The notes under the pieces were generated by a model. The model did not search any database. It was not told where the DNA came from and saw nothing but the letters and a program-made list of their open reading frames with translations. Both the position numbers and the translations under genes were made by a program. A DNA stretch of 64,000 nt, taken from positions 1,240,001-1,304,000 of the forward strand of contig NC_047081.1 of assembly GCF_902459465.1 (NCBI RefSeq), given 5' to 3'. Positions 3,201 through 28,600 of the stretch are shown piece after piece. The stretch comes from Asterias rubens. Its lineage: Eukaryota. How positions within the stretch are numbered: the first letter of the stretch is position 1; each line of letters begins with the position of its first letter.

Positions 3201-6200
3201 GCCTCGGAAGTGGCAGCCAGGGGATCATCTCTAGGGGGTGCAACTTTTTTTCCTTTTTTTTTCTTCCAGAAACCGAATCATTAACAACAAGGGAAACTGA
3301 CTGGGTAAATGTTCGAATCAAGTTTTTTGTTACTCATATCAATCAGTGTTTGATTACAATACCCTGGCTTTATCCTGCTGATATTGGCACATCCTTTTGT
3401 CAGATCCATCGCAGAATTCATTAACGCTATAATACATCTTAACGAAGAAATTTACAGCAAGAGTTCGTCGTACCTTTGTCTGCATTGACAGGGACGCGCC
3501 GTGCTCCAATAAGACGGCTGCAACATCCTCCATCCCCTCCCTAGAAGCGATGTGAAGCGCTGTGTAGTGATCTCGCGTCTGCGCATCGGGGGACGCACCA
3601 TTCTCTAGCAGCAGGGTGACGATCTCCACGTTGCCCAGGCGGGCGGCGATGTGCAGAGGGGTCTGGTTCTCAGTAGCCTTGGCGTCCACCTTGGCACCGT
3701 TGCGTAGAAGGACGCGGATAATGTCGATTTGGTTTGCGCGAGCTGCGAGATGGAGGGCAGTCTCACCACGCTAGAGAAGGTTAAAGAGAGAAGGGGGATT
3801 AAGAAATAGTAACAAACATAAGAACTTGATAACTTTATGAGTTCGGATATATACTCCGCGGCAGTAGAATAAGTTCTCTAAAAACATTTCCACACAGTAA
3901 GTAAATTATTCTGGTAAGCATAATTTTGTTGTGCTTAGCTACTTGTACAGGTTTAAATGCACAGGTGTGATGTGGCAAAGTCTGCAGCCAAAACAAGCTA
4001 GAAACACTAGGACGAGCTCCGTCTGTGAGCTGAGCACATCCACTTGCCTTACCAAACACACTTCACTTACAGCTTTACGTTCTGTCGAAAGCTACATTTA
4101 TTTCAAGGAAGTTTAGAAACCTGTATAAAGCTTACCACATTGGTTTCGTCCACACTAGCGCCATGGTTGATCAGGTAGCCAACGATGTTAATGTTGCCCA
4201 TGAAAGCAGACACATGAAGTGGAGTCAGTCCAGACTAAAGGATTGAAAAAATCACAAAGAAATATTTAAAAGGGCGGGATTTAAACCAATGACCCCTGGA
4301 TCTAGCCAGGCAGACCACTTAAAGTGTATTTTGACTGGTCTTATGAGTTTTTTTAACTGGCATTTGGCCAGCTAACCAGTGTTAATGGAGAACATTGAAT
4401 TGGCAAGCAAAGCAATGACTGTCCGCCAAAAATGCCCCAATTAAAACCAGAGTGAATGTTTGCTGAATCGCCTATTGACACAAAAGAATATCCTTATCGC
4501 ACAATGTTCTGAAAACAAAGGGTTCTTTCGGCCAGCAAACCACTGAAGGCTGGAATGCTATGAAAGATGAAATAATCATTCTCAAATGAGAAGATTGTTT
4601 TCTTTGTCTGGGTTCTACATGTACGTACCTCTGTTGTTGCATGAATGGAAGCGCCATACTTTAGAAGCAGCTCAATCACCTTGACGCGGTTCTTCTTACA
4701 GGCGATGTGGAGCGGGGTGAATCCATTCTGAAGACAAACAAGATCGGGTTAAATTAAAAAAGTTACCGTTGGGGGTGGGGTGTAAAAACCCTCTTCTCTT
4801 GGAAATGGCAGAGCTGTCAACATTTGCTTCTTGTAATCAGAAAAATTTTGTAAGACAATCAGGGAGATATTTATAATTGCGTTCCTTTTGACCTCCAAGA
4901 ACGCCCTACTTAAAGGACGTCCAGCAGAACGGCCAATTTCATTTTCTTTCAAAGCTCATTATTTTAACCCATTTTTTATGTTATTTATCAGGAAGGTAGT
5001 CGTCAATATAAACAAAGATATTTTAGGGCATTTAAAGTTACAATAGTTTATTTGTTTGTTTAATTTTTTTTTTTAATTTTTTACCACTGTTGGCCATTTT
5101 TTGCTTGTTTCTGCAAAATGATGTTTCCAACAAACGACTCCTTTAGTTTGATCGCATCAAATAAATTGAAAACTCACCAGAGCTCGGGCACTTGGGTTGG
5201 CCTTTCTGTCCAGCAGTAGTTTGGCCACACGGTGGTGACCACAATGACCGGCCACGTGGAGTGGGGTCAGATAGTCCACGGTCACGTCGTCCACTGGGGC
5301 CTTGTGGTAGAGTAGAAGACGAGCACTGTCTACATGGTCACCTTGGGCTGCCATGTGCAGGGGCGCCAGTCCATTCTGTAAAACACAAAAATGATTTTTC
5401 AATGATAATTCAATGCTAGAGTTTGACCAGAGCTTGTTGCCTGCAAATTGCCCCGTAGGACATGGCCTCAAGCCCTTGAGATGTGATATTCTTTGGTTAC
5501 TCAAATCAAGCTATTTAAGTGTACCTTGGTCTTGGCAGAGATTGGTGCGCCCCTCTCAAGGAGCTGGTCAACGCATTGATCATGACCGCTACGGGCAGAG
5601 CAGTGAAGTGGTGTCAGTCCATCCTACAAACAGAGAGAGAAAAAGTTAGGTTATCCTGAGGTTTTCAAAGCAATAAATTATTCCAATACTTTAGGTGTTT
5701 CTAATCAGCAGAGTGTAGGTTCAAGTCCCGGTTGTGTCACTTGTGTTCTTGAGTAAGATACTTTACCGCATTTGGATGGGCCATTAGGCTCCAAAATACT
5801 GCTGCCCGCATTGTGACACTGTCTAGAAAATCCTGTTCTATCACCCCCATTCTGAAACAACTACACTGGCTCCCTATCTCTCAACGAATCATCTTCAAGC
5901 TGATGCTCATTGTCCACAAAGCTCTAAATGGCAAGGCTCCCCACTATATTTCTCAACTGCTTCAAGTTTACACTCCATCAAGGAATCTTCGATCAAGTTC
6001 CATGCTTATCCTCATTGAACCCAAGTCTCGACACTCACGGGGTGACAGGTCTTTTTGTTCAGCCGCGCCACGCATCTGGAACTCTCTACCACTTAATCTT
6101 CGATCTTGTGTTTGTACCGCAAAATTCAAGTCTCTTCTCAAAACTTATCTTATGTCACAGGTTTTCAATGACTAATTTTGTTGTGTCTGTTTTTCTTTGT

Positions 6201-9200
6201 GTTGTGTTTTGTTTTTGTTTTGTTTTTGGTTTTACTGCGCCTTGAACACCCAGCAGGGTGGATATGTGCGCATTACAAGTCTTATTATTATTATTTCATT
6301 TTATCACAGCATGCAACATTTCTCAAAAACTACACAACCTTAGTTAGTAATATTTGAAGGGAAGCTTTCCACTATCATTATCTTCAAACCCTGTAAGTTT
6401 AATGTAAATCTGTGGACATTTTAAAAAAGTACCCGAATCCCTTAACTTACCCTAGTCTTGGCATCGATTCTAGCTCCTCGATCAAGCAGGGTGTTGACCA
6501 TGTTGACGCGGCCCCACTTAGCAGCGACATGCAATGGCGTGATGTTATTTCTGGCTGCATGGTCAACCGACGCGCCCCTTTGCAGGAGAAGGGTGGCTAC
6601 GTTGACGTGACCGTAGTGGGCTGCGATGTGGAGAGGGGTGAATCCACTCTGTGGGGGGGGGGGGATGGTGATAGCAAACAGGGTGAGAATCATTGCCGAC
6701 AAGAAAATCTGACTCTAGGATGACAATTTTAGGAGTGGGCCACGAAATAACCAACGGCACCTACAGCAATTGCCCTGTGCTTTTGCTGTGGTGCCCTTTG
6801 CAAAGTTCCAATACAATTTTACATTTTCCTTAAAGAATGTGCCCCTCACCAGAGGAAAATTGCTGCGCTGCATCAAGAAACGATTCAAGCGCTGTGAAAT
6901 TGGGCCTAAGTTGAACCAAGGTATTCATGCCACCGTGTGCTTGAGGCAGTGCATCATTGTTTCTTCTCTCCACACAGTACAACCCCAAAATAAAGACCCA
7001 ACAAAGCCAATTTGATATTGTGTTTGATAAGCCTCGTAAGTGCTGTCGATCCGAAAAGCGTCCTCACCCAAAGGGGCTGAGAAAATAAACGGATTGTTGG
7101 CCAAACGTATAGGGGGAAAGAATAACACTGTGAGCCTCATTGGGGAATATATGCCCAGTGCGCTTAAGTATTCTAAATCCCTTTAAATCCTTCTACACCA
7201 TTAAAAAGAGGAAACAAACGAAGAACACAGGCCTGTCTATGTGATGTTAGCTTTCTATGCTTTGATTGGTCTGGCGTGATGTAGTTTGTTAGCTTGCATT
7301 CTCGATTAGGAAATGCTTACCTTTGATGTGATGTCTGGGTTATGTCCGCTCTGCAGCAGCAGCAGGGCGGCTTTGGTGTCGTCGCGGCGAGAGCAGATGT
7401 GCAGGGCGGGTAGACGGGTCTTCCCTGCCCGATCATTCTCCAGCAAGACTGCGACGACCTTGTCATGTCCTTGTTGTAGAGCAACTGCGAGGGGCGTGTA
7501 GCCATCCTACAAGTGCCAAAAACATACCCCAAGAGACAAAAAGTTAGATACGACTCTGGTAATATTGTAATTCATCTTCAGATTTATTTTCAGGGCTCGA
7601 ACTTATCACTGGACAACAGGCCTGTAGCCTGAAGCCATCCTTAAATGTCAAACACATACGCACACAAAAATAAAAAGTCCTGATTTCACCTCAAAAGATT
7701 TGCTGGTATTTTTTACGATGTTAGAGCTTGCACAGAATTAATTGTAAGACACCATTAACCTCACACGTTTAAAGGGGAGGTTTTTTTCAGATGCAAAGGC
7801 AGCAAATTTGCAATCTAAGCAGTCTGCTGCCACCTAGAGTCTCAAAATCTACAGGATTCTCATTAAATTTCTTTTACATCCTAAGGCGTAACAACATTTC
7901 CATTATGAGCAAAAAGGAGTCTATGTCTGAATTCAGATAGGAGTTTTTTGGTTTCCCAATAGAAACACATAATTAAACCCTAAAGCATTATTTTCCTGTT
8001 GTTGATGTTTTCCATTTGCTGTTGTAGCAAGAACAAAACAAATTGAAGTAAATCAAGAAGCGGATTATTAAGTTATAATCAGAGGTACCCTCAAATAGAG
8101 ATGTACATTTAAAATCTGACAATTGATACGGTTAACAAACACATCAACACGGATTAAGGAAAATAAATGTCTAGTAGATATATACAAGCATGCAGGTACA
8201 TGTACATGTAGGAAAATGGCTTTGAAACAGTACTGGCAGTTTTGAATGATATTCAAATTATACTCTGAATTAACAAAAACAAATTGAAGAGAAATTAATC
8301 AGAACTTGTGGGAACATTTAATAAAACAACATTATTTTTATCGGTTTTTGTTTTGTTTTGCTATTCCGATATCAGGGAGAATAGGCCACATACAAAAAAA
8401 GAGATAAAAACAAACAAATTCATTAAACAAATTATGTGTGAAACGCTTGCAGACTTTTATTAAAACTTGTTATTGACACATTGCATTCAGGTCTCACTTG
8501 CAGGCAAGAGAATGACTTTAAAAAATATCAAACACAAAAACAATATTAGTGATCTGAAATATGTTCCCCCAAAGAATACCTTAGGTTTTAGGAATCAATT
8601 TTTAAAATAGTTTAGTGTAGATAGAAAAGGTTCCATGTGCACAGAATTTTTTTATTTTAATTTTGCCTTGTTTTTTTCCCAAGAAGTTAATTTTGAAAAA
8701 ATGAATTACCTTTTAAATGTTTGTAACTATTATCTCATGTCAGATTTTAGCAAGTGTCTAACTGGTCTAACTATAGATTTTTAATAATTTATTTTAGGAG
8801 CATGCATTTTTTCAAAATCTCTTTCCTTTATTAGTCATTTTTCATAACCTATGATAAAGACAGAACATAAAGCCAACACCAACTACACAACAAAATAAAT
8901 GATCTCAAGGTCATCAAAAATAAACAGACCAAAAAACAAAAACATAATTTTCAAGGTCACAAAAAACAGTAATTCATTGTTCAATTTTAAATGAAGAAAC
9001 AAGAGAAAAAACAAATCCCTTTTTTCCTCAAAATGAATAAATATATTGAAAATTAAAATTACGTACATGTACAAGTTGGTTTTTACCTGTAGTGGAAACG
9101 CTTTTGCAACCGGATTTCACCTTTAAAAATAATCAGTTTACAATCTGCCAAAACTTAAAGAGGCTTGCGTGTAGTGTTTAATATTTCCCTCTCAAAAGAA

Positions 9201-12200
9201 AAACCATACTAAAAAAATTTTCTGAAACTTTAAAATCTCCCTTTAAGCCAGAAGAACTTAAACCCATCCAAGTTTGATTTTGTTTGGAGTGAGAAAAGAT
9301 TTTCAACTTCCACGCAATCCTCAAAAAAGTGTGTACACAAATTTGTATAAAGGTGAAACAATTTCATTCACTGCAGTAACACACAACAAATTGCCTAATT
9401 TTTTACTACTTGCTCTAAGAAAGTTTGAAAAAACATCACTGACGTTTTTTGAAATGACTAAAGACGCAGAGGGCTTCGAGAAAAGACATACATGTATAAG
9501 AACATTGAAGAGACACAAACAAACAATCATCCAACAAACAAACAAACTAACAGTGACCTCAAAAAGAGCTTTTAATTCAGGCAATCTTACGATTGGACAA
9601 AAGTGCTAGAACAACCATTAACGACGGTAACCAAATTTCTGAAAAAAATTCTAGGAAAATTTTGCTCATGAGGTTCTGGTCATGACCAAATCTCAAATTT
9701 GGTAGCATATTGGAACCAGGGACAGATTTCAATTTTGATCTGAAGCAACTATTGTTGTTGTTGTTGTTGTTATTATGTTCTTCAATTTAAAGAACTGCAA
9801 CCTCAATTTTGATGACATTTGATGACATTTGACCAGAATTTCTTCGCTCAAAAGTATTCTCTTACTTATATTTTTAAAACAACAAAAGAGCGATTAGTAC
9901 TTGTTTTTCCACAAAATCGGAACGCCATGACATTTTGGAAGTTTTTAATTCCAACAACAAACTTTCAAAAGCGACACAGTTGTTCTAAATAGTGCAATCT
10001 ACATTATTAAGGAAAGCAGAATTATGCGAATGGCTTTTTTTCCATCATGCTCTGTAAAAACAAGCGTACTTTCATTACTAAAGGTTAGGTTGGCCAGATC
10101 TCTTAAAATAGGAAGTTAAAAAAAAGGGCAGTTACTTGAAAGGCAAAATTTATTCCCCGGTTTAAAAAAAAAAAAAAACTGTAGGTTTGAAATATAATTA
10201 TAAACATTAGATTTTGGTGTTAAATAAATACCGCAAGGCACTTGTGAACATACGCAATGGGGTAAAGTACTTTTGGGGGAAATTTTTAGAAGTTCAAATT
10301 TAACTCTTTGTTTGTTTTGAGGCATTGCATTGTGATGTATCAATGTGTATTCGGTTTGCGGTTATGCCATGTTTGTACTACTGTGCTTTGTAGATTGATG
10401 TTTTGGGGGAACTAGGTCTTGCCTTTTTTAATTCTACTGCCGCAGGGCAGATTTCAAAACTCAGAGCCAAGTATTCTCAGGAATTCCAAAATCTACTCAT
10501 TGGCAGTATAAAAAAGCAAGACCTAGCACCAAAAATCTACAAGCAAAGATGGTATAAACATGATTCTGCTGCAAACTGCTTACAACTCACATTAAAAAAA
10601 AGACACAGTTCAAATGTCGTTTGAGAAGAATTTGCTTTGAAAACCTTCAGAACACAAATTTGAACTTCAGTTTCATGAATTACAAAACATAATTTTTGCA
10701 TTTTTGTTGTTGCATAATTTCAGACCTGATCTCAAAGATGAACCTAATTATTCAGATACAAATGTACAGCGCATATTTATGTTATTGCTGTGCCCGAAGT
10801 GCTGATTTTAACAAAAGTCTTCTCCACTTAATGATTTGTTTACCCTTTGGCTTTGGTGATAGGAAAATATTTCTCAAGATTGCCTGTTTCATTCTTTGTG
10901 ATTCTTATAATTTTCTCAAGATTTTATTTTGATTATTATTATAATTAGTATTTCCTTCTTTTGTTCTTTCTTTGTTTTTGTTGGGGGGGGGGGGGTGTTT
11001 CCTGACAGCAGGTAGTATATCATTTGAACAAATCTTGCAGTCATACATTATGCATTAACAGACCACGAGCAAAATTTGATGCAAAAGATTATGTTCGTTA
11101 AAAAGTCATCTAAAACGGCCAGTACTGTTACCATGGCAACCACATCTGACTTTCAAAACACACACACAAGAAAACATCATTCACTGCTACTGTTTTTGTT
11201 AATAGTACACGCTACAGTGTAATGTGAAAGACAACAAAGTCACGCCAGAGGAAGAAAAAAAGAAAAAAATACACATGAATTTTTGATCGGGGGATTAAAT
11301 TTATGGTTTGAGTGCTAACTCTTTTGTGTTTGGTGTCCTACCATGCAGATGAGGTGCTAGTTAACGATGGCGACCAATAAGCGTGCATATCTAGGCTAGG
11401 TCAAGTACATGCGACAAACTTGCGTGAGAAACAAAGCTGCTTGCAAAAGTCTCAGCCCCCCCCCTCTTATGGGTTGACCGTTAAAACAGTCATTTCTACC
11501 TTTCAGAGACCATTCATTTCTGTCTAATCACCACAAATTGCCCCCAGATTGCTACTATTGTTCATTTCTTTAATCAAATTTCTTTCATCAGTGTCAAAAG
11601 AAATAAATTGAAACAGAAAATTTAGTTTTATGTTTAAAGATTGGTATACTATTAAATAAACTAAATTGGAAAAACTTCATATCCGGATATGACCCTTACT
11701 TTGAACTCTTTATTATGCCCCAACCCCCAAAACAGCCCTGTGTTGCAGTCACTATGTGGACATTCCTTTGTGCTTTACACTTCAGAAAAATAACACTGTA
11801 AATAACAATGTGTGGACGTGTGTAAGTCTACATAGTGTTTAAAGTTCCTACACTATGTGGACTTCTTTTGCTCTAAAGACCATACTTAGTAGTGTTTAAA
11901 CACCCAGGCCGCCCCTCCCTCCAAATAATCATTAAGAAGTTAGACAGATTGAAGATGCGTTTTAGTGGGACAAAACAAGGGAGTACGGTGAGTGTCAGTC
12001 AAGTTATGCTTCAGAAAAGAGCTTTCTGGATTGGTGTTTAGAAGGGGAAAAAAGTAGAGAAGTCTTCAAGAGCACTGTACACACACAAAAATAACTTGAC
12101 AAACACTCCTCAAAAAATGTTTTACATGTACACCAATTATCTAGGGTCAGGATACACACACAAAAATAGTACACTATACACTGGTGATGTTTTGTTTGTT

Positions 12201-15200
12201 TTCTGTTTTCTACAATCATACACAAGAAGATTATAATATAAATGTACAATCGGAGCTCACGGTTGTCGTGACTTACGTACCTCCTGCTTCGGAGGGTACT
12301 TGGGCCGCGATTGGTGTTGCAAAAGCGTTTCCACGATTTTATAATGGCCCTGCTGGGTGGCGACCTCGAGCGGAACGAATCCGCCCTATGGGGTTTGGGA
12401 TGGGTGGTCGAAGGGGGTAGGTTGTGGTTAATGGTGCAGAGGAAGGGGGGACGGGTGGGTATGCAACGCCAAATGTTTAAACATAATTCATTTTGTTCCC
12501 ACAGCATGCGTGTATAAGAGAAAGACAAGACATTAATAAAGAGTGAAAGGGGAAAGGTATACATATAAACAAATGCAGGTCCAAAATACCACAATCAGAC
12601 GAAACTCGGTGTTGATGAAAAGTTTGAAAATGATATTTTGTCGCAAATTATCCAAAGTTTTTGAAAAAAAGTAACAAATCAAGTTAGCACGTTTTTTGTT
12701 TTCAATCAACTTGTCTCCTCAAACTTGAGGATTGGAATTATCAAAACATTTAATATTAATTTTTAGCAAACAATATACAGTTTAAAAATTATTTTGTTTA
12801 AATTAGAAGATTTTCAGGCACCAAAAGCTTGTTAAAACATATCATTTTTTCAATCTGGAATTAAATTCACAGCAATCTTACCACCCTCAAGTAATAATCC
12901 ACACTGGGTAAAAGTTTAAATAGTTTTGGGATTAATGTTTAGGAACTCTACCACCTGAGCTATCTAGCCCTTTGTGGGCGGTCCCCTATTGTGTCTAAAT
13001 CTTTGTTCAGGGGGTGCCAGTCAGAAGCTGATCTTAGCCTCCTAAATTGTATGCCCCAATCTCCACATAAACGGACAAATATTGCTACTGTTTTGACTGA
13101 TTTTAAAGAAAACTTGTTTTATGTGTACTTGAACTTGCCAACTGGGGCCAATTTCATAGAGCTTCTTCAGCACAAAAACCAGCTAAGCGCAAACCAACTT
13201 TGCTTAGCCGAGAGGGGTTACCAGCCAAAGCACCATGTTATGTACATAGTTTGTGCCTGGTACCCTGCTTATTTGTGCTTAGCAGACATTTTGTGAATCA
13301 GAAATTCTATGAAGTTGGACCAAGATAATTGGGTCCAAGTCACAAAGGGGTTGAAATCTTTATGGGGTTTTGTTCGGGAGGTGGGGAAGGTTAGAGGTGT
13401 TAAGACGTTCTTACCTCCGTCGCAAGGTTCTGGTTGGCGTTATTGTTCAGTAGATATTTGACGACCTCCTCATGGTTCTCCTGGGCGGCCATGTACAGCG
13501 GAGTGAAGCCGCTCTGCGGTTATGAAAAACGGTGAGTTTTAAGTGAGAAACAATCACCGCGAACATCCAGTTGTGACGTCAGAATTTGCTTGGCATCATT
13601 GAACTTTAAAAGTAAAGTCTGTCCCGAGCCAAAATGGCTCATCAGGCCGGTGAATACATAAGATTTCATTGGTATTTAACGACTGAGGACATTTCTATAG
13701 ACCGTATTGAATAACCACTTTTTGCTATAAAAGTCGCCATCTTGTAGGGCAAACTATATGCGCGTCCAAACGCGTACATCATCGAAGCACGCAGTACGCA
13801 ACATTCCCGGTTTATTTCTACAGCACATGCACGCGCGCACACACGCACGCACATGCGCACAGACACCATCTTGTAGGTCAGATATTTGAACAGTGACATC
13901 ATATTCAATACAGTCTATTCCCCCTGGACAGGATGCCAGTCCATCGTAAGTTACTACCCAGCTCTCGCTGCTCTAAAACACAAACGAGAAAACTACATGT
14001 ATCGTAAGAGGAAATCTAGATAGTATTTTAAAAACAAACGGCAAAAACAGCACACCGCATCCCAAACACTGCACAAACAAAACTAGACAATGTAAAAAGG
14101 TAGATACAAAAATGAAAGCTTACCACGGATTTCCGTATTTATTCCCCCTCACAATTCAATAACTAAATGCCGTTTGGAAATATATTATTCTACCCTGTCC
14201 ACAGTTATTATTTGTTAAAACTAACTCATTAGCATAGGGAGCTTTCCCCTTGACATTAGAATAAAATATAACCCGATTATTTCATTATAAGTTTATGATC
14301 TCCTATTAATTAAACATTAACTTGCTGATTTATTATTTCCAAGTTAAAGTTAGTTGACGCTTTACCAAAACATTAGTTACCATCAAGTTCAACTACCACC
14401 TTTGAACCCTCGTACTGTTTACGTTCTAAAATTCCCCCATTAGCATTTTGTAAACTACTTTTGTTACTACTCTCAGAAAAAGGAAAAAAACAGTGCAGAA
14501 TCTAATACATGTTTTAGTTGTTGCAGTACCAGCAACTAAAATATAGAATTTGAACTGCCTCTAGTTACCACGCAATCTAAGTGGTCTAGTGTTATGAAGT
14601 CCCACAATGTAATTCCTAGCCAGTGCCCATTTTCATACAGTTGCTTAGGCATAACAAGTAGCTAAGCAAAACAAAATCATGTTAAGCAGAATAAGGTTAC
14701 CAGCCAAAATACCATGTCACATGTACAACTTGTGACTGGTACCCTGATCCTTTTTGCTTAGCAGGAAATTGTTGAGCAATCTCTGCTAAAAGCAGCACCA
14801 TAAAATTGGACCCTGGTCTTTGCTCTGACTATCTTTGCGAGCAAAATAATTATTTCTTCTAAACTACTTCTACTAGCTGCAGTCCTTTACAGAGCAATGA
14901 CAATGACTCTGTTGAAAAATAATTAGTAAATTACCGCCTAGTTTCGTAAACTCAAGATTGTACACCTCTATGCTAATCAGCGGTTCCTTTCTTCAAATAA
15001 CATCTCAAGTCACATTTATTTTAGGTCGAATAGGATGTACAACTTTGCCCAAGTCAAGACAAGTCACAATATGAATGTTTGAAGAAAATAATAACAAGTT
15101 AAAAGATTATGATTATTTTTTATTTTTTTCTCCTTTTATTTTGTTTCCTCCCCCCCTTTTTTTTTTTTTGGGGGGGTTCAGTACAAGGCAAGTCAAAGGT

Positions 15201-18200
15201 CAAATTTGTCCATGCAATGTCAGAGGTCATTATTTTACCTGATTTATACCTTAGTAAAGTAATGCTGTAGACTATTCAGTTAATCTTCAAGATACCAATT
15301 GATAGTTTGAGCATAATTATGTTCTCATTAATATTCAAATTAATCCCAGATACTACTTAAAACCACTTCAGCTCCGCTCAGTGTCTTGTCACTTCAGAAG
15401 GCAAAAAAGTTGGCAATGAGGTGAAAAAGCTTGTGATAGGCTGCTTTATGATTGGTGCAAAATGAAAAACAGAGGCTCTGATTGGTTGTCGGCTGATGAG
15501 TGGCTCGACCAATCCGCTTGGCTTACCTGTACACCTGGCTGCTTTTGTTTGTTGTTGCGAATCTAAGAGTGTCAAAATCAAGGTTGTGTTTTTTGGTTTC
15601 CAATATTTAAAGACTCTTAATGCGTTTAGATGGCAGCAGACATAATCAGATACTAGACGATTTCGCAAACACTACAAATGCGTAGGTTAGCTATTGAATG
15701 AAGTGCAGACAGGTCTAACAAGAAACCAAAACTTGTAATATGTGCACTTTCCCAGTATTTGCGAAATTATGTACCCACGATATCTACTGCCACCGTGCAT
15801 CCCAAAGTTTCCCACTGTTACACACTCAAAAACTTGTCTAAGCCATTTCCATTCAGAGTTCATCAAATCCTTGGTGTTTCGACGTTTGCCGTGAAATGTT
15901 GCTCGTCCAAAGCAGATGAAAGTTGTAAAAATTATTACCACAAGCAGAAGAATTTGATTAAAAAAAATATGAAAAAATCATCTGAAGATTATCAAAGAAA
16001 TTGCTGTAGTATGAATCAGGCGAGATATTTGGTCAAAGGAAAAAAGTAGATTTTTTTTTATCTAGTACAAGGGCTGACCTGGGGTCGATTTCACAAAGAG
16101 TTAGGACTCATCTTATCGCAAGTTAGGCGAGTAACTCGTCTTAACTTGGGATTTATCTTAAAGTCTGCATGCTACAGTGCAGGGTTGGGACTCGTCCTAA
16201 GTCCGAAGATTAGTCTTAAGTTAGGAAGAGTTTTGTGAAATCACAACAGCACACGCAAAGGCTGTGATACACTTTTCAAGTCTTACATGTATTTAACCAA
16301 AAAGCAGAATACGGACTAAAGCAGGAAGAATATCATGGCCCATGAATAGCTGCATGTCTGGAGTAAATATGCACATTTTTAACTCTCAAATGCTTTAAAG
16401 CATTTCAGCAGAGTATCAATTCCCCTTTACTGAAGCCCCACCCACCCCTTTTCATAGTACCGTCGCATTCAAGAACTCTATTTACCTAGAGTAGGATATA
16501 AGGGTAAAAACATAGAATACGAATGAAGAAAAGAATTCAACGAAGAGTTACCTGAGACTGAACATTGACGTTGGCGCCATGGTCCACTAGGGCCTTCACA
16601 ATTGGCTGTTGACCGGCCAATGAGGCGATGTGCAGGGCGGTGTTCCCTTTCTGAAATGGCGAAAGAAACGTACATGTACTTGAAAGAGCCAGTAAGAGCA
16701 ATTTTAATAAATAGGCCCTACATCACTGTAAGGCCACTTTACAGAAGTGTTACTTGACAAAAGCAGTGGCGTTCCATGGCACGAGTGGTTCAGAGCATCG
16801 AACTCAAGCTCTGGGGTTTCTGATCAGCAGAGTGTGGGATATTCAGCCCTCTGTCCCATGTGCTAGGATTGGTAGTGCTTGTCAAAGTACCCAGAACATT
16901 CATTCAAGGGAATACATAGTGCTAGTCAGAGAAGTGTCTGTGTGTCTTTCAAAAACCCTTTTAAAAAATTTGGACACACAGTTTTTCAATTTCCAGCAAA
17001 ATTTTGACACCCTTTACCAAATCCCGGCTAATAATGTGTTCTTTTCTAAACGGAATCTCTCCTCAAAATAAAGCATGCCCCAGACTAACCCCCAAACAAA
17101 TTCCAATGCATTATTCCCCAGCCAGTTGACCTTTCGATAACACGATCTTCATCAACAAAGTCTAAGTACCACAAGTGTATCCAAAATAATGTTCTTTAGG
17201 GACCAGCAATCCACGTGGCTGTGACTATCCTCTTAGAAGGATATTGTCTTTAAATCAGAATGGTTTAAATAAACAACATAAAAACTGAGTCTGTGTTCAT
17301 AGTGGATTTGTGCGTACATCTAATAAAGACAGAGGTTGTTTTGAACCTCCTCCCCTCATCAACTCAATATCGAGGGGGCATGTCGGTTTTATTATTACCC
17401 CGGTTGTTCCTACTGATGGAAACGACACCATCTTGCCCCCCGAAGGGAAGTCGCGGGGGCTTAGTCCGAGTTGGTGCACGCTTAGCTAATCAAACACGAC
17501 CACCTCCGTAAGCCCCTATGGGTTCCGACTGAATGAACTCACCCGAGAGGGGGAACAGCAATTATTGAAATTGCGTCTGGGTCTGGGGACCCGTGATCTG
17601 AACACCCTGTCTGGTGGCGGGCTCGGAAAGAGAAAAAAGGTGAGACGTCTTGAGACGTTATGAGCTGAATGCAGGATTGCTCTCAGCTGCTGCTTTGTAT
17701 GTTCTTTTTTGCGGTTTTTGTTTTCTTCAATAGAAGGAAAGTTCGTGAGATTTTGCTAGACATGCATTAAATTTCGGTGGCCTAAAACTGTTTTTTTTTT
17801 TTCGTTTTTTTTCTTCCCGTTCTTATTTTTTTCTTGAAAACACAAACAGTTTTAAAGGATGTTTGAAGCAGGCATGGTGTAGAAAATAAAGAGTAACTGT
17901 ATGATTTTTTATCAGTTAAATTTGGGTTGAAAAAAGGGAAGTTTGACTAGATCGGGATTTGAACCAACAACCTCCGGACTAACATTAGGCGCTCTCCCAA
18001 CTAAGCTATCTAGCCCCAATGTTAGCGGTTTGCCTATTTTGTCAATATCTTTGTTTGGGGGTTCCAGGTAGAAGGCACACAGCCTGATAGCCCCAGATCC
18101 AGTTAATTCAGAAGGCATTGGTTGAAATCCAGCTCTACATGTAGTTAAGTGTTCTTTGTTCAACCCCAAATTATCTTTGGTATGATTATTTTTAGTATAA

Positions 18201-19601
18201 TATTTTACCTTGGTGGCGGCGTCAACATTAGCTCCTCTCTTCAATAATTCCTTGACGATGTTCAGGTGTCCTTCTTTGGAGCTCAGATGAAGAGCATTCA
18301 AACCATTCTAAAAGACACAAGAGAAGTGAACATTTTGATTAATTAAATAAGTATTTATTAAAAAGGCAAATTGCATCGAATGATTATATTCTGCAACAAT
18401 GCATGATCGAAATGTATCAATGCAGTCAACAAATCATACACCTTCCATAGACCATGTAGACTGGTCAATAGACCGATACACTAAGCTCCGCCCCATTGCG
18501 TATTGACCAATCACAACACAACGAAGGTCCAACAAATAAGGTCCGACATGCGTGCGCGTATCTTGGCGCGCGCGGCAGAGTTGTGCAGAAAGGCATTGGA
18601 AAGCCCCACGTGTTCTTGCTCACACGTGCGTCGTGGGCAGAGCCTACTGGATCGGTCTATTGTTTAGACTGCAGGACTTGCACTCACAAAGTTGTGGGTT
18701 TGAATCCTACTAAGTATTGCCGTCTAGCTACTGAGTCACGATTTATTGATTAGTGCAATATCATAATCATAGATGTTAAAAACAATGTTAGTATGAGAAA
18801 GAATTGTTGTTGCCAGCCTGGTGCATATCCCCATTGTGAGAGTTTGCAGAGTTCCCTTGGTGGGAAGATCATCTAAACAAAAAAACAAACAAACAAACAA
18901 TTCTGAACCTTGCAGAAGAGCTTGATACATTTAAACTTCCGACTGACAGCATGTCTCATTGTGTTCTTCTTAATTTAAAGCCTGTCTTTTTGGTCCTTCC
19001 ACAACCCAAGTCGCCCTCGGCAAACCCTGGTCGTAAGGGGGTCCAAATCACTACTAACAGCCATTTGAGGGGCCAATCATCAGAATCACCTGCTGTAATA
19101 AGCATCTTAAATTATGCAAGGGCCCTCCGAGCAAACTGATAAGACTTGTCAAAGAAAACGCCGGGAAGTTAGGTAGAATCTCTTGAAAAAATTTATCATG
19201 AAAGGATGTTAAGAATTTTCTGGAATGTTCGAACACATGGAAGGTTACAGCTTGCACAAATGAATACATTTAATATCTTCAAAGCTCTTTTTTGTGTGTG
19301 TTTTCCCGTTTTTTCCCCATTTTTTTTTTGGTTTGTAAATTTATTGTAAGAATCATTGGTGATAACCATTGGCCAATTTCATCACGCTAATTTGAAGAAC
19401 AACAATATTCTGCTAAGCAGGAATTGATCACCAGCAAAAATGTGTATAAAGCGAATACCTGATTCTAAACATGCTAATAAGTATTCGGCCTGAGCAGATT
19501 TCTTGTTTATGTTATAATGTTTCTTTGTTGTGTTTTTTTTTTTTTTTTTCTTAGCCTTCGAGAAAGATTCTGCTAGGATCAAAACTATTTTTTAATACCA
19601 T

Positions 19602-25600: not shown

Positions 25601-28600
25601 CTCTGCCGTTTCACACCGGAGGCGGTCGCTGAGGGTATTGATGCGTTTCTACTGGCCAGGCGTAAGGGTCGATGATTACGTTATGACCATCAATTAGAGC
25701 TCTCTCGTTTATTTTGTGAGTTCGTGTACATTGCTTGACTTGAATTGAGCTGCGTGATCCTTGTGGTACTCAAGTGCCTACAGCTACTTGAGCTACAAAA
25801 AAAACCTGTTTAACAGGAATGCTATTTTAACTTTATAATTTGTTCGGTTTATCATATAATTGATTTTGGTTATTTGACATGTCTCAGTTTTTATAATTAC
25901 CGATAACAAAATCAGGACCCAACCTCAAGGTTCAGCTACTTGACACTATAATACATGTGCTTTGAAAACTTGACAATACTTTGAAATCAACTGTGGGAGG
26001 TTTATTATACCTCCATGTTGCAACATAGCAGCTTTATAAAACATAGCTCCCACATATGATGACGTGCATTTAACAGTGTTACACAAATCCTTCTGAAAAG
26101 CACGGGAGAAGGGGTGTTAAAAAAAAATTAAATTTTTCAATTAAAATTTGTCCACTTCGGAAAGAAAAAAACTTCAGCAAAGATCATGTGATGCCGTTCT
26201 CTTCCGAAATAGTAAAAACATTTTTTTTTATTATTAACTTAAGGCAATCCAAAGTCCCTGTTTTTTGGAACTTGACTTTGCATCGAGTGAATAGAACATA
26301 GTTGTGTTGTAGGCATTTGTCTTCTTCCATTAATTTGAAAGAATGGAGGAAGAAACATTTGAAGCTAACCTTCACAATTACTTGTAAGCGCCTTTACATG
26401 ATTTCATTTCCTACATAGCAGCGAGTTCAGAAACTGCATGCTCATGGTGATGATCAAACAATTTTTAGCAGCCCTCAAAAAATGGATCACTTCCCCAAAA
26501 CCTCCCCCCTAACCTACCCCCCCCCCCAACAAACACACCCTTAATTGCGCCTACTTTGTACAACCCCCTCCATTAAAGACTTCCTCTGGCATCATCCAGA
26601 CCTAATTGCGATAATTTCTGTCACTGATCTCGTTTCAAATTAGCTGACCAGGTTTTTCAATAATAAAAAAAGTGTCTCTGTCCCCGAAGGAACTGAAGTG
26701 GCTACCAGAAGGAAATCTCATTATTCTGTTTAAAAGAAACAATCTAAGGACAGATTGTTTCTGACAGGAAATGGATCGTTGAAGGAAAACTTGGGTTCTA
26801 CTTTGCACAAATAAGGGTACAGGTGAGTTCACAATTTAGGACCCCTGGCATATTTGAAGAAGAAAAAAACGCTGCCGAAAATTATCGTTTACAAGCTTTG
26901 CACAAAATGTTTGATCAATATTAAATTCTCTACTGAGTTTAGAAAAAGTAATATACAAACAAAAACTGAAAATTAATGCTAATTTTTGCAAAAAGAAGTG
27001 AAATTGTAGCTTTGTGATGCGTGTCTAATTTGATTTATGCTACATAATATGTATCTGACAAAAATATTACAGAGCTGATGATGTTTTCATCTTGCACAAT
27101 CAGGGAGATATTTACATTCAACTTACTAGGGACAAAGTTCAAAAATTCACAGAGATTTTCTTCTTGTTCATTAGAACATTGAAAGATTTGTTTTATTTTC
27201 AGGAACTTTCTGCAGAACCAAGGAAAGTTGGCAGTTTCACGATTGTTGGTTAAGGGTTTTCACCCACATTATTAAAGTACTGTGTTGAGAAAAGAAAACT
27301 TGTACGCTTTGGATTTCAATTTAGAAAAAAAAAAATTATTATTTCAAAATTTTAAGAAAACGAAGAGTCGGCCCGAATATGTTTTCGCAAATGCATTTGT
27401 CTCATGCCTGCATTCTACGTACAATGTCCAGAAGGCATGTTTTATTTACACTACATCCATTAAGTTAGTCTTTTAAGTGCTTTTCTCTGTTTACTGTATT
27501 TATGTTTCAGCCTTGAAACTTAAAACCTAAATATAAGTTTCACTTTTTATGGATTAAACTTTTCCATAATTATGTTTACAACTGCAGTGAAAGGCTTCAA
27601 GGATTCACATTTGATTTTATTTGTTAGGGTAAAAAATATCCTCTTCTTCTAAAACTACAATACTTTAAGGTACCATTTCCAATAATGTTTTTTAGTATCA
27701 ACCAGTCCTCTTTACCAAGTACTTATTTTAGGGCCAATAATTATTTTTGAGCGTTTACCAAACGCACAACCCTCCCTTTAAACCAAAACATTTTCATTAT
27801 TGTCCATATTCGTTCCTTACAATAAAATAACATACAACCCTTTAATCTATTAGGATATTAGTGTAGAGCAACACATTTTATGTCACTTGTTATGTTTTCC
27901 ACCCCTCCACAAATGCAATGGAACAATCAAAGTTAATTTGCATACTACTGTACATTGCACTGCTGGCAAAGACAACCTGCACATATTAATATCCTTTCAC
28001 CCCTATTAAACAGAATGGAACATTCCAGTCCTGTTCTTTGCAAGCATAGAGTAGATTGATTACCTCATGAGGTAGAAGGGTCACTGAATGAACCAATGAA
28101 ATGAGGGGAAGTAAACCATTCATTGGGTGTGACTGGGAATATTGTAATGAGGTGAGAGCCTGGCAACAGAGGGGGCTATAACACTTGTCAGTTGCTGCAA
28201 CCACCCCAGTAAACTATGCCATACATACAGTGTTAAATGCTAAACATTCCAAAATGCACACAAAATACTCAGAAGTCTTACATCTTTTAACAGTAGCCTA
28301 AATTATTCATTGGTTCTTGAACTTTTATCCTCTGCTCAATTTGATATGGGAGTTCCAGGGCAATGCTAGTTATTCTCCCTAAAAAAAAAAACACAACTGG
28401 AACTCGAACCCCTACTCTGCTGATCAGAAACACCAGCTCGAGTCCAGTGCTCTTAACTGCTAGGCCATGACATGCAACACCCCAACACCCTTAATGAATT
28501 AAAAAATTGTATGAGCCTGCATGAATTTAAGTTCATATTAAGATTGTCCAATGGAAATGCCCTTTTCAAAATGGCCATGCCCTTTCCAAGATGAAACTCC

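What the first reader, a model, noticed from the sequence alone, without database searches (positions are those of the whole stretch)
9092..9110. Perfect 19-nt antisense partner of the duplicated ankyrin exon, 3.2 kb downstream in the pre-mRNA
Seen: plus 9092-9110 GTGGAAACGCTTTTGCAAC is the exact reverse complement of plus 12316-12334, the middle of the 105-nt exon. In the minus-strand pre-mRNA the two can form a 19-bp helix. A rough estimate for a chance match to that exon within 64 kb is of order 1e-5 to 1e-4. Inference: a long-range RNA pairing that masks the exon (docking/selector-type control as in Dscam) or an ADAR editing-complementary sequence. It abuts a CAG|GTAAAA motif at 9087 and a possible 34-nt pseudo-exon (9087-9120). 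Caveat: 9085-9245 ends in ccctttaa and might be a MITE remnant.
Basis: partly seen in the sequence, partly recalled or inferred. Interest (0 to 1): 0.8.

Follow-up and report, generated by a model that had tools for sequence, protein, structure and literature searches.

The report
Conserved intron partner of ankyrin exon
A 19-letter stretch deep in an intron of a sea star's ankyrin gene is the exact mirror-complement of the middle of an optional exon, and it is kept letter for letter in a distantly related sea star, so it most likely folds back onto the exon in the RNA to decide whether that exon is used.

Summary
Window 9092-9110 is the exact reverse complement of 12316-12334, the centre of the 105-nt optional ankyrin exon. 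The 19-mer occurs nowhere else in the 417.6-Mb genome, and its surroundings are single copy, so it is not a MITE or other repeat.

The decisive evidence is conservation. In Acanthaster planci the orthologous 5.3-kb intron cannot otherwise be aligned, and 4-fold sites of neighbouring exons are only 45% identical. Yet that intron holds the identical 19-mer 2.6 kb downstream of an exon arm that is also identical, again followed by CAG|GTAA.

A scan for conserved complementarity found one more pair in the same intron. This second helix (11129-11106 with 8249-8226) has an 11-bp invariant core plus two compensatory pairs. It interleaves with the first helix and lies near conserved (U)GCAUG motifs. 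Controls gave no such pairs.

Best reading: a selected long-range exon-intron RNA helix, part of a structured intron that controls inclusion of the 25th ankyrin repeat, probably by masking the exon. An ADAR editing-complementary sequence remains a live rival. It is not a Dscam-type docking/selector system.

Not shown: pairing in vivo, the direction of the effect, and editing. Novelty: a new member of a known kind. The scan had noted the exon before (s1-150110), but not this conservation.

The parts
9092..9110 (-). P1: intronic arm of helix 1 (RNA sense GUUGCAAAAGCGUUUCCAC), 3170 nt downstream of the cassette exon's 5' splice site and about 1.6 kb upstream of exon 5
   Evidence: Exact complement of 12316-12334. 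Unique in the genome. Identical 19-mer at L017:4934-4952 in the orthologous A. planci intron. Only significant alignable island in the intron interior.
12316..12334 (-). E: exonic arm of helix 1 (codons V-E-T-L-L-Q of the extra ankyrin repeat)
   Evidence: Identical in A. planci (L017:2319-2337). Also identical in an Echinozoa-type exon on metagenome contig L013, though that contig was found by searching for this 19-mer.
12281..12385 (-). 105-nt cassette exon encoding an extra (25th) ankyrin repeat, a duplicate of repeat 5
   Evidence: Present in annotated isoforms of A. planci, Diadema, Lytechinus and Apostichopus. 98/105 nt identical between the window and A. planci. 12/16 four-fold sites identical, against 45% in constitutive exons.
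9081..9091 (-). Spacer plus 5'-splice-site-like CAG|GUAAAA directly 3' of P1
   Evidence: Window UACAG|GUAAAA; A. planci AAGCAG|GUAACG. CAG|GUAA is kept in both species. The 29-nt block 9110-9083 is 93% identical. No use as a donor was seen in the RNA contigs.
9111..9122 (-). AG|GUG... acceptor-like edge of the possible 34-nt pseudo-exon (40 nt in A. planci)
   Evidence: AGGUG is present upstream of P1 in both species, but at a different distance and with a poor pyrimidine tract in A. planci. Both lengths are 1 mod 3 and would shift the frame. Status uncertain.
11106..11129 (-). A2: 5' arm of a second conserved long-range helix (core ACAGUACUGGC)
   Evidence: (I2). Orthologous core at L017:3695-3705.
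8226..8249 (-). B2: 3' arm of helix 2 (core GCCAGUACUGU), about 720 nt upstream of exon 5
   Evidence: Orthologous core at L017:6664-6674. dG -33.8 (window) and -32.9 (A. planci). Two compensatory pairs beside the core. Formed in the MFE of the whole 6.2-kb segment.
8189..8194 (-). UGCAUG (Rbfox-type hexamer) 33 nt 3' of the B2 core
   Evidence: Counterpart 19 nt 3' of B2 in A. planci (L017:6693). Motif-level evidence only.
11342..11412 (-). Two (U)GCAUG motifs 66 nt apart, about 220-290 nt 5' of A2
   Evidence: Colinear pair 70 nt apart in A. planci (L017:3357, 3426). Motif-level evidence only.
12505..12509 (-). GCAUG in a conserved block (CACGCAUGCU) about 120 nt upstream of the cassette exon
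   Evidence: Same decamer at L017:2125-2134.
13415..13513 (-). Constitutive exon 4 (ankyrin repeat 4), upstream neighbour
   Evidence: Its 3' end is joined directly to exon 5 in the spliced contig of run X17.
7321..7506 (-). Constitutive exon 5 (repeats 5-6), downstream neighbour and paralogue of the cassette exon
   Evidence: Its homologous segment matches the 19-mer at only about 7/19 positions, so P1 is specific for the cassette exon.

Best explanation
9092-9110 is the intronic arm (P1) of a selected, kilobase-range RNA helix with the centre of the optional 105-nt ankyrin exon. In the minus-strand pre-mRNA the order is exon 4, cassette exon (arm E), A2, P1 followed by CAG|GUAA, B2, exon 5. 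E pairs with P1 (19 bp, -31 kcal/mol). A2 pairs with B2 (about 22 bp, -33 kcal/mol). The two helices interleave.

Proposed working: when E:P1 forms, the middle fifth of the exon is double-stranded, and the exon's 3' third with its 5' splice site sits in a 3.2-kb loop. Exon definition then fails and exon 4 is spliced directly to exon 5, giving the 24-repeat ankyrin. When E:P1 is prevented, the exon is recognised and a 25th repeat is inserted. Prevention could come from proteins on the exon, from helicases, or from the rival fold in which A2:B2 closes a loop around P1 and shortens the path from the cassette donor to exon 5. Conserved (U)GCAUG motifs beside A2, beside B2 and upstream of the exon suggest that Rbfox-type factors use these helices as RNA bridges.

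Shown: complementarity, uniqueness, deep conservation of both arms and of helix 2, covariation in helix 2, and predominant skipping in one RNA sample.

Inferred: that the helices form in vivo, that E:P1 represses rather than promotes inclusion, and the roles of the (U)GCAUG motifs and the CAG|GUAA motif.
For: The complement is exact and the borders are sharp. It is unique in 417.6 Mb and not a repeat.

In the A. planci locus L017 the orthologous intron holds the identical 19-mer 2.6 kb downstream of an identical exon arm, with the same helix borders and CAG|GTAA after it. The rest of the intron cannot be aligned. Four-fold sites in 10 constitutive exons are only 45% identical (132/291), so neutral sites are near saturation.

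A scan for k-mers shared by both species whose reverse complement is also shared gave only helix 1 and helix 2 between exon 4 and exon 5. It gave none in the orthologous 7-kb region downstream, and 0 of 256 rewired window pairs at k of 11 or more.

Helix 2 has an 11-bp invariant core and two double compensatory changes (G-C to U-A, U-A to A-U), with similar stability in both species. CAGTACTG occurs in the 64-kb window only at A2 and B2. P1 has no other strong partner: the next best is -16 kcal/mol and is not conserved.

The nested MFE of the 6.2-kb segment forms helix 2. Enforcing helix 1 costs only 7.3 of about 1497 kcal/mol, so the two folds are near-degenerate.

In run X17 a spliced contig at depth 471 joins exon 4 to exon 5, while the cassette exon sits at intron-level depth of about 12. 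The cassette exon is more conserved at 4-fold sites (12/16) than its neighbours.
Against: Helix 1 shows no covariation, because neither arm varies between the two species. Pairing is therefore inferred from complementarity plus conservation and has not been demonstrated. Ten positions of P1 could mutate to G-U wobble without breaking the helix, yet none has. This hints at a constraint beyond simple pairing, such as ADAR specificity or overlapping splice signals.

Only two sea-star genomes could be compared. An Echinozoa-type contig (L013) keeps the exon 19-mer but has no complement of 10 nt or more within 2.3 kb upstream or 4.06 kb downstream, and it has no A2/B2. The module may therefore be asteroid-specific, or the partner may lie beyond the end of that contig.

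The direction of the effect is not shown. Looping could equally bring the cassette donor closer to exon 5 and favour inclusion. The RNA evidence is from assembled contigs of one or two runs, which cannot give inclusion levels or rare junctions. The state of the 19-mer in the close relatives (runs X8, X17, X18) was not visible, because the variant table was truncated.
Confidence: 0.55

Rival explanations
1. ADAR substrate: P1 is an intronic editing-complementary sequence. The 19-bp exon-intron duplex recruits ADAR before splicing and recodes one or more adenosines of the exon arm (possible E to G, T to A, Q to R in IVETLLQ). Any effect on splicing is secondary. This rival is not exclusive of the main reading.
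For: The geometry, an exonic site paired to a conserved island in the downstream intron, is the classic ECS layout. Conserved intronic islands within about 2.5 kb and stems of about 20 paired bases are the criteria used to predict distal ECSs in Drosophila (PMC5319793). P1 is invariant even at 10 positions where wobble would be tolerated, and the exon arm is invariant at all 6 synonymous sites. Both fit the tight structural constraint typical of site-selective editing. The genome encodes an ADAR-type protein with two dsRNA-binding motifs and a deaminase domain in one open frame.
Against: No A-to-G evidence was found. Contigs of the RNA-like run X17 over the intron show no excess of T>C on the plus strand (7 of 54 changes), although contigs hide partial editing and the rows for the arms were not displayed. 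The duplex is short, perfect and closes a 3.2-kb loop, whereas known selective sites usually have longer, imperfect stems. The conserved CAG|GUAA beside P1, the second purely intronic helix and the (U)GCAUG motifs point to splicing control.
Confidence: 0.2
2. P1 belongs to a conserved splicing intermediate site. It could be a frame-shifting poison mini-exon (34 nt here, 40 nt in A. planci). It could instead be a recursive splice site, with a pyrimidine-rich UUUCCAC..CAG acceptor abutting a GUAA donor. Complementarity to the cassette exon would then couple use of this site to use of the exon.
For: CAG|GUAA directly follows P1 in both species, and the 3' half of P1 is pyrimidine-rich (UUUCCAC), as in YnNCAG|GUAAGU ratchet sites (the consensus is from my own knowledge). 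AG|GUG lies 10-15 nt upstream in both species, and both putative exon lengths are 1 mod 3.
Against: No junction at 9087/9086 or 9121/9120 was listed in the RNA-like runs, though the joint table was truncated. The acceptor side has a poor pyrimidine tract in A. planci. The reading frame of the 19-mer differs between the species, so it is not coding. A 4.8-kb intron has no obvious need for recursive splicing. This reading does not by itself explain perfect complementarity to the exon.
Confidence: 0.12
3. No RNA role. The match is a relic of a small inverted duplication of the exon, or the two copies are one DNA-level element (for example a protein-binding site) present in both orientations, or the match is pure chance.
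For: Sharp-edged short inverted copies can arise by template switching (own knowledge). The plus-strand flank of P1 weakly resembles the Echinozoa-type exon flank (ACC-TGTA against ACCTTGTC), which is compatible with an origin as an inverted exon copy. Across a genome of about 6500 windows, a few chance exon-intron 19-mers are expected (estimate).
Against: A neutral relic would not survive 19/19 in an intron whose other sequence is beyond alignment, while 4-fold sites are 45% identical. A chance shared 19-mer between the two introns has an expectation of about 2e-4, before even requiring complementarity to the exon. The 19-mer, allowing 1 mismatch, occurs nowhere else in the genome, which is unlike a general protein-binding motif. 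A second conserved helix with compensatory changes lies in the same intron.
Confidence: 0.08

Closest known systems
Conserved long-range RNA structures that modulate splicing (Drosophila intronic pairs, PMC2724269; human PCCR catalogue, PMC8052449)
   Same: Two complementary boxes kilobases apart in one pre-mRNA, both conserved in an intron that has otherwise diverged, next to an alternative exon. The same catalogue reports lower inclusion for exons placed in a loop by stable pairs.
   Different: One arm here lies inside the regulated exon itself. The helix is perfect and invariant. The organism is an echinoderm, where I found no such case described.
ATE1 competing and ultra-long-range structures (PMC7797038); bidirectional pairing model for duplicated exons (PMC6071210)
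   Same: Several conserved intronic boxes form alternative helices around tandemly duplicated exons. Here helix 1 and helix 2 interleave and are near-isoenergetic. The cassette exon is a tandem duplicate of part of exon 5.
   Different: In ATE1 two boxes compete for the same third box, and the exons are mutually exclusive. Here the helices share no nucleotides, so the competition is topological at most. The exon is a cassette that coexists with exon 5.
Dscam1-type docking site and selector sequences (PMC12962786, PMC6071210)
   Same: Base pairing over kilobases decides which duplicated exon is used, and the key element is extremely conserved.
   Different: There is no exon cluster, there are no multiple selectors, both Dscam arms are intronic, and the choice there is mutually exclusive. 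The defining features were tested here and not met.
Exon masking by an exon-intron stem, for example chicken beta-tropomyosin exon 6B (recalled from memory, not checked here)
   Same: Part of an alternative exon is sequestered in a stem with intronic sequence, and the exon is skipped by default.
   Different: That stem is local, spanning tens to hundreds of nt. This one closes a 3.2-kb loop and is accompanied by a second long-range helix.
Rbfox RNA bridges (ENAH case, as summarised in PMC8052449)
   Same: Distal UGCAUG sites lie next to arms of conserved long-range helices that could bring them near a regulated cassette exon.
   Different: Only hexamer-level evidence is available here. The A2 arm is still 1.1 kb from the exon. 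No binding data exist.
ADAR editing sites with distal intronic ECS (PMC5319793)
   Same: Exon-intron duplex, a conserved intronic island within a few kb, and suppressed synonymous change in the exon arm.
   Different: No editing is shown. The stem is 19 bp and perfect rather than longer and imperfect. A donor-like motif abuts the element.

Membership tests
Conserved long-range RNA structure regulating splicing (PCCR-type) | Two complementary segments of 10 nt or more in the same pre-mRNA, far apart | tested here: met
   19 bp, arms 3205 nt apart, dG -31.2.
Conserved long-range RNA structure regulating splicing (PCCR-type) | Both segments conserved in orthologous genes while the surrounding intron diverges | tested here: met
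   Identical arms in A. planci. The intron is otherwise unalignable, and 4-fold sites are 45% identical. Rewiring control gave 0/256.
Conserved long-range RNA structure regulating splicing (PCCR-type) | Compensatory substitutions that keep pairing | tested here: inconclusive
   Helix 1 has no variation in either arm, so no test is possible. Helix 2, in the same intron, has two double compensatory pairs.
Conserved long-range RNA structure regulating splicing (PCCR-type) | Disrupting and restoring mutations change and rescue exon inclusion | not testable with these tools
   Needs a minigene or morpholino experiment.
Dscam-type docking site / selector system | Cluster of mutually exclusive exons | tested here: not met
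   Annotated isoforms in four echinoderms carry the cassette exon together with exon 5. The exon adds a repeat rather than replacing one.
Dscam-type docking site / selector system | One docking site complementary to several competing selectors, all intronic | tested here: not met
   P1 has a single strong partner, which is exonic. The next best site is -16 kcal/mol and not conserved. The paralogous segment of exon 5 matches only about 7/19.
ADAR editing site with intronic ECS | Exon-intron duplex with a conserved intronic arm within a few kb | tested here: met
   At 19 bp it is at the short end of the roughly 20 paired bases used as a criterion.
ADAR editing site with intronic ECS | A-to-G differences between RNA and DNA at the paired adenosines | tested here: inconclusive
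   Only contigs were available. The variant table was truncated before 9092 and 12316. There was no T>C excess in RNA-like run X17.
ADAR editing site with intronic ECS | Organism encodes an ADAR (dsRBD plus deaminase) | tested here: met
   G000 contig C3 has an open frame with 2 dsrm motifs plus A_deamin, and the rest of the domain lies in the next exon.
MITE or other interspersed repeat | Multiple copies in the genome; terminal inverted repeats | tested here: not met
   The 19-mer occurs only twice. 8950-9300 is single copy.
Recursive splice site / poison exon | Juxtaposed acceptor and donor motifs (YnNCAG|GUAAGU), or an exon bounded by AG and GU that shifts the frame | tested here: inconclusive
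   CAG|GUAA is conserved after a pyrimidine-rich stretch. Putative exons of 34 and 40 nt are both 1 mod 3. The acceptor is weak in A. planci.
Recursive splice site / poison exon | Junction or lariat reads that use the site | tested here: inconclusive
   None was listed in two RNA-like runs, but these are contigs and the joint table was truncated.

The most novel reading that the evidence does not exclude
The intron holds a bistable, interleaved (pseudoknot-topology) pair of kilobase-range helices of equal strength. One helix has an arm inside the exon, next to a U1-type decoy site. The other is flanked by Rbfox-type sites. Together they would form an RNA switch, conserved since the origin of crown sea stars, that sets whether ankyrin's membrane-binding domain has 24 or 25 repeats. 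The same exon-intron duplex may also serve as an ADAR recoding site.
Probability: 0.25. Interest if true: 0.75.

Novelty: new member of a known kind. Interest (0 to 1): 0.6.

Why it matters
Ankyrin's 24-repeat solenoid is treated as a fixed scaffold for membrane partners. Echinoderms can insert a 25th repeat, and this finding gives a concrete, testable cis-element for how that choice is made.

Functional long-range RNA helices have mostly been documented in insects and vertebrates. Here a case outside those groups has a perfectly conserved exon-embedded arm and a second helix with compensatory changes. Echinoderm embryos accept morpholinos and reporter constructs, so disruption and rescue tests are practical.

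The case also shows that a single exact exon-intron complement flagged by eye can be validated by one distant orthologue.

Tried and rejected
1. Chance or repeat: rejected. The only other isolated 18-mer inverted pair in the window (16816/28414) lies in tRNA-SINE-like repeats.

3. Using spurious intronic ORFs as handles to fetch relatives' contigs.

4. Scanning metagenome contigs for the 19-mer gave 9 hits. Eight are unrelated, roughly the chance expectation. One (L013) is an echinoderm contig with the orthologous exon but no partner within reach. Its perfect 19-mer cannot be used as independent evidence, because it was found by that very search.

5. Sea urchin and sea cucumber loci were unreachable. 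The longest isoforms exceed 5000 aa, and the S. purpuratus gene range exceeds 100 kb.

6. A fragment-level protein search for cassette-bearing transcript pieces returned none.

7. Rfam found no family in 7000-13600 apart from a sub-threshold miRNA hit elsewhere in the intron.

8. An alternative partner of P1 at 10834-10810, seen in the nested MFE, is weak (-16 to -18 kcal/mol) and not conserved.

9. Dscam-type membership: rejected (see the membership test).

10. Homology of the P1 flanks to an ancestral exon: only 6 of 8 positions with a gap, too weak to build on.
Full report
OBSERVATION

The plus-strand 19-mer at 9092-9110 (GTGGAAACGCTTTTGCAAC) is the exact reverse complement of 12316-12334. 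No such match appeared in 100 dinucleotide-preserving shuffles, even allowing three mismatches.

The gene is an ankyrin on the minus strand. The exons around the site are:
- exon 4, ankyrin repeat 4, about 13415-13513;
- a 105-nt exon at 12281-12385 that encodes an extra repeat ([35 protein letters not shown]);
- exon 5, repeats 5-6, at 7321-7506.

In the pre-mRNA the exon arm (E) comes first. The intronic arm (P1) lies 3170 nt into the 4774-nt intron that follows the cassette exon. The flanks do not extend the pairing, so the helix is exactly 19 bp, with a duplex dG of -31.2 kcal/mol.

CHANCE OR REPEAT?

Allowing one mismatch, the 19-mer occurs only at these two places in the 417.6-Mb assembly. 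Window 8950-9300 matches only itself.

Inside the window, every other exact inverted match of 18 nt or more is low-complexity or belongs to a repeat family. That includes the 18-mer pair 16816/28414, which sits in tRNA-SINE-like sequence.

Across a whole genome, however, a handful of chance exon-intron 19-mers would be expected, so uniqueness alone does not prove function.

CONSERVATION

I confirmed the second point. Annotated ankyrin isoforms of Acanthaster planci, Diadema, Lytechinus and Apostichopus all carry the exon between repeats 4 and 5, together with exon 5.

The A. planci locus could be fetched (L017). It has the same layout: exon 4, then a 1.2-kb intron, the cassette exon at 2268-2372, a 5.3-kb intron, and exon 5 at 7644.
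- The cassette exon is 98/105 identical to the window's, and the exon arm is identical.
- The downstream intron contains the identical 19-mer complement at 4934-4952, 2.6 kb from the exon.
- The flanks are non-pairing on both sides, as in the window, and CAG|GTAA follows.

Apart from the exon-proximal flanks, this is the only significant alignable island in the intron: 29 nt at 93%, E = 2e-5. Four-fold degenerate sites in ten constitutive exons of the same gene are only 45% identical (132/291), so neutral sites are close to saturation. A shared 19-mer between two unrelated 5-kb introns has an expectation of about 2e-4. That it is also the exon's complement in both species cannot be chance. P1 is under purifying selection.

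A SECOND HELIX

I searched the exon 4 to exon 5 segment of both species for k-mers shared by both whose reverse complement is also shared. Only two pairs came out. The first is E:P1.

The second is A2 (11129-11106, core ACAGUACUGGC) pairing with B2 (8249-8226, core GCCAGUACUGU). Its counterparts in A. planci are L017 3695-3710 and 6659-6674.
- The 11-bp core is invariant.
- Next to the core, two pairs change on both sides (G-C to U-A, U-A to A-U).
- The helix is about equally stable in both species, -33.8 and -32.9 kcal/mol.
- The octamer CAGTACTG occurs in the 64-kb window only at these two places.

Controls: the orthologous 7-kb region downstream gives no such pair at k of 10 or more, and 256 rewired window pairs give none at k of 11 or more.

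The order E, A2, P1, B2 is the same in both species, so the helices interleave. In a pseudoknot-free fold of the whole 6.2-kb segment, helix 2 forms. Enforcing helix 1 instead costs 7.3 of about 1497 kcal/mol. P1 has no other strong partner in either species.

(U)GCAUG motifs lie at colinear places in both species: about 120-140 nt upstream of the exon, as a pair 220-290 nt 5' of A2, and 19-33 nt 3' of B2. This is hexamer-level evidence only.

RNA EVIDENCE

Only assembled contigs could be laid on the region, and only once.

Run X17 behaves like RNA. A 2-kb contig at depth 471 ends in the last 27 nt of exon 4 joined to exon 5. The introns and the cassette exon are covered colinearly at depth 7-12. 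In that sample the exon is therefore mostly skipped.

No junction at the CAG|GUAA site was listed, and there was no excess of T>C changes. However, the tables were truncated, and contigs hide minor forms. The rows for 9092-9110 and 12316-12334 in the relatives (X8 at about 4.5% divergence, X17, X18) were not displayed.

OUTSIDE THE SEA STARS

A metagenome contig (L013) carries an Echinozoa-type version of the exon with the same 19-mer, although the rest of the exon is only 74% identical. Because it was found by searching for that 19-mer, its perfect match is not independent evidence.

L013 has no complement of 10 nt or more within 2.3 kb upstream or 4.06 kb downstream, and it has no A2/B2. Neither neighbouring exon is on the contig, so a partner further away cannot be excluded. 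Sea urchin and sea cucumber loci could not be fetched.

INTERPRETATION

The best-supported reading is a selected long-range exon-intron helix that belongs to a structured intron controlling inclusion of the 25th repeat. I favour exon masking, with helix 1 leading to skipping, for three reasons:
- 19 central nucleotides of a 105-nt exon would be double-stranded;
- the exon's donor would be looped in;
- skipping predominates in the one informative RNA sample.

Helix 2 may be an alternative or cooperating fold that loops P1 out and shortens the intron. These steps are inference. The sign of the effect could be the opposite.

The main rival is an ADAR editing-complementary sequence. The layout and the absolute invariance of both arms fit it: ten positions in P1 that would tolerate wobble are unchanged. 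The genome also has an ADAR-type gene. But no editing is shown, and the neighbouring donor-like motif, helix 2 and the (U)GCAUG motifs look like splicing control.

A poison mini-exon or recursive site at P1 is possible, because CAG|GUAA is conserved and the putative exon lengths of 34 and 40 nt are both 1 mod 3. It has no support from junctions.

A neutral relic or a DNA-level element is very unlikely, given the conservation.

COMPARISON WITH KNOWN SYSTEMS

It works like the conserved long-range pairings described in Drosophila and human genes (PMC2724269, PMC8052449) and like the multi-box structures around duplicated exons in ATE1 (PMC7797038, PMC6071210). The exon-intron geometry is that of exon-masking stems and of ADAR substrates (PMC5319793).

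It is not a Dscam-type docking/selector system. The exon is a cassette that coexists with its paralogue, there is one partner rather than many, and one arm is exonic.

I found no report of this element. I rate it a new member of a known kind, of solid interest because it is deeply conserved, sharply defined and directly testable in echinoderm embryos.

Noticed in passing
window 11106-11129 and 8226-8249 (minus strand); L017 3695-3710 and 6659-6674: A second conserved long-range helix lies in the same intron. It has an 11-bp invariant core plus two compensatory pairs and interleaves with the reported helix. It is not part of the finding as given, but it is central to the interpretation.
   Followed up: yes
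window 12505-12509, 11408-11412, 11342-11347, 8189-8194 (minus strand): (U)GCAUG (Rbfox-type) motifs lie at colinear positions in the window and in A. planci: upstream of the cassette exon, 5' of A2 and just 3' of B2. This suggests RNA bridges. The evidence is at hexamer level only.
   Followed up: partly
window about 7617-7668 (minus strand): A copy of about 53 nt of exon 5's acceptor region, including AAG|GATGGCTTCA, lies about 130 nt upstream of the true acceptor at 7506. It could be a decoy acceptor.
   Followed up: partly
L013 (metagenome contig JAAUXV010272793.1), exon at 2361-2462 of its reverse complement: An echinoderm contig in a metagenome collection carries an Echinozoa-type version of the cassette exon (DGFLPIDVATQQGHDLVVETLLQHSRPQYPPKSE). 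Its 19-mer is identical to the window's, though the exon is otherwise 74% identical.
   Followed up: partly
window 16816-16833 and 28414-28431: An 18-nt exact inverted match lies between the introns after ankyrin exon 1 and before exon 3. Both arms sit in tRNA-derived SINE-like sequence, so this looks like inverted repeat copies rather than a dedicated helix. Conservation was not checked, because L017 does not reach that far upstream.
   Followed up: partly
G000 contig C3:14796846-14802813 (L019, L020): An ADAR-type gene: two dsRNA-binding motifs and the first half of the deaminase domain in one open frame, with the second half about 4 kb downstream. Four further A_deamin loci lie on C16, C15, C4 and C5.
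   Followed up: partly
window 18479-18625 vs 49700-49846; 29114-29500 vs 32619-32989 and 45084-45109: Inverted copies of interspersed repeat families account for nearly all the other long exact inverted matches in the window.
   Followed up: no
run X17: A run whose kind is listed as unknown behaves like RNA. It has a spliced exon 4 to exon 5 contig at depth 471, and introns at depth 7-12, so it could serve for nascent-RNA analysis if its reads were available.
   Followed up: partly
window 12281-12385 vs L017 2268-2372: The cassette exon is more conserved at the nucleotide level than its constitutive neighbours. It is 93% identical against 81-90%, and 12/16 four-fold sites are identical against 45%. 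Conserved intron flanks extend about 170 nt upstream and 110 nt downstream.
   Followed up: partly
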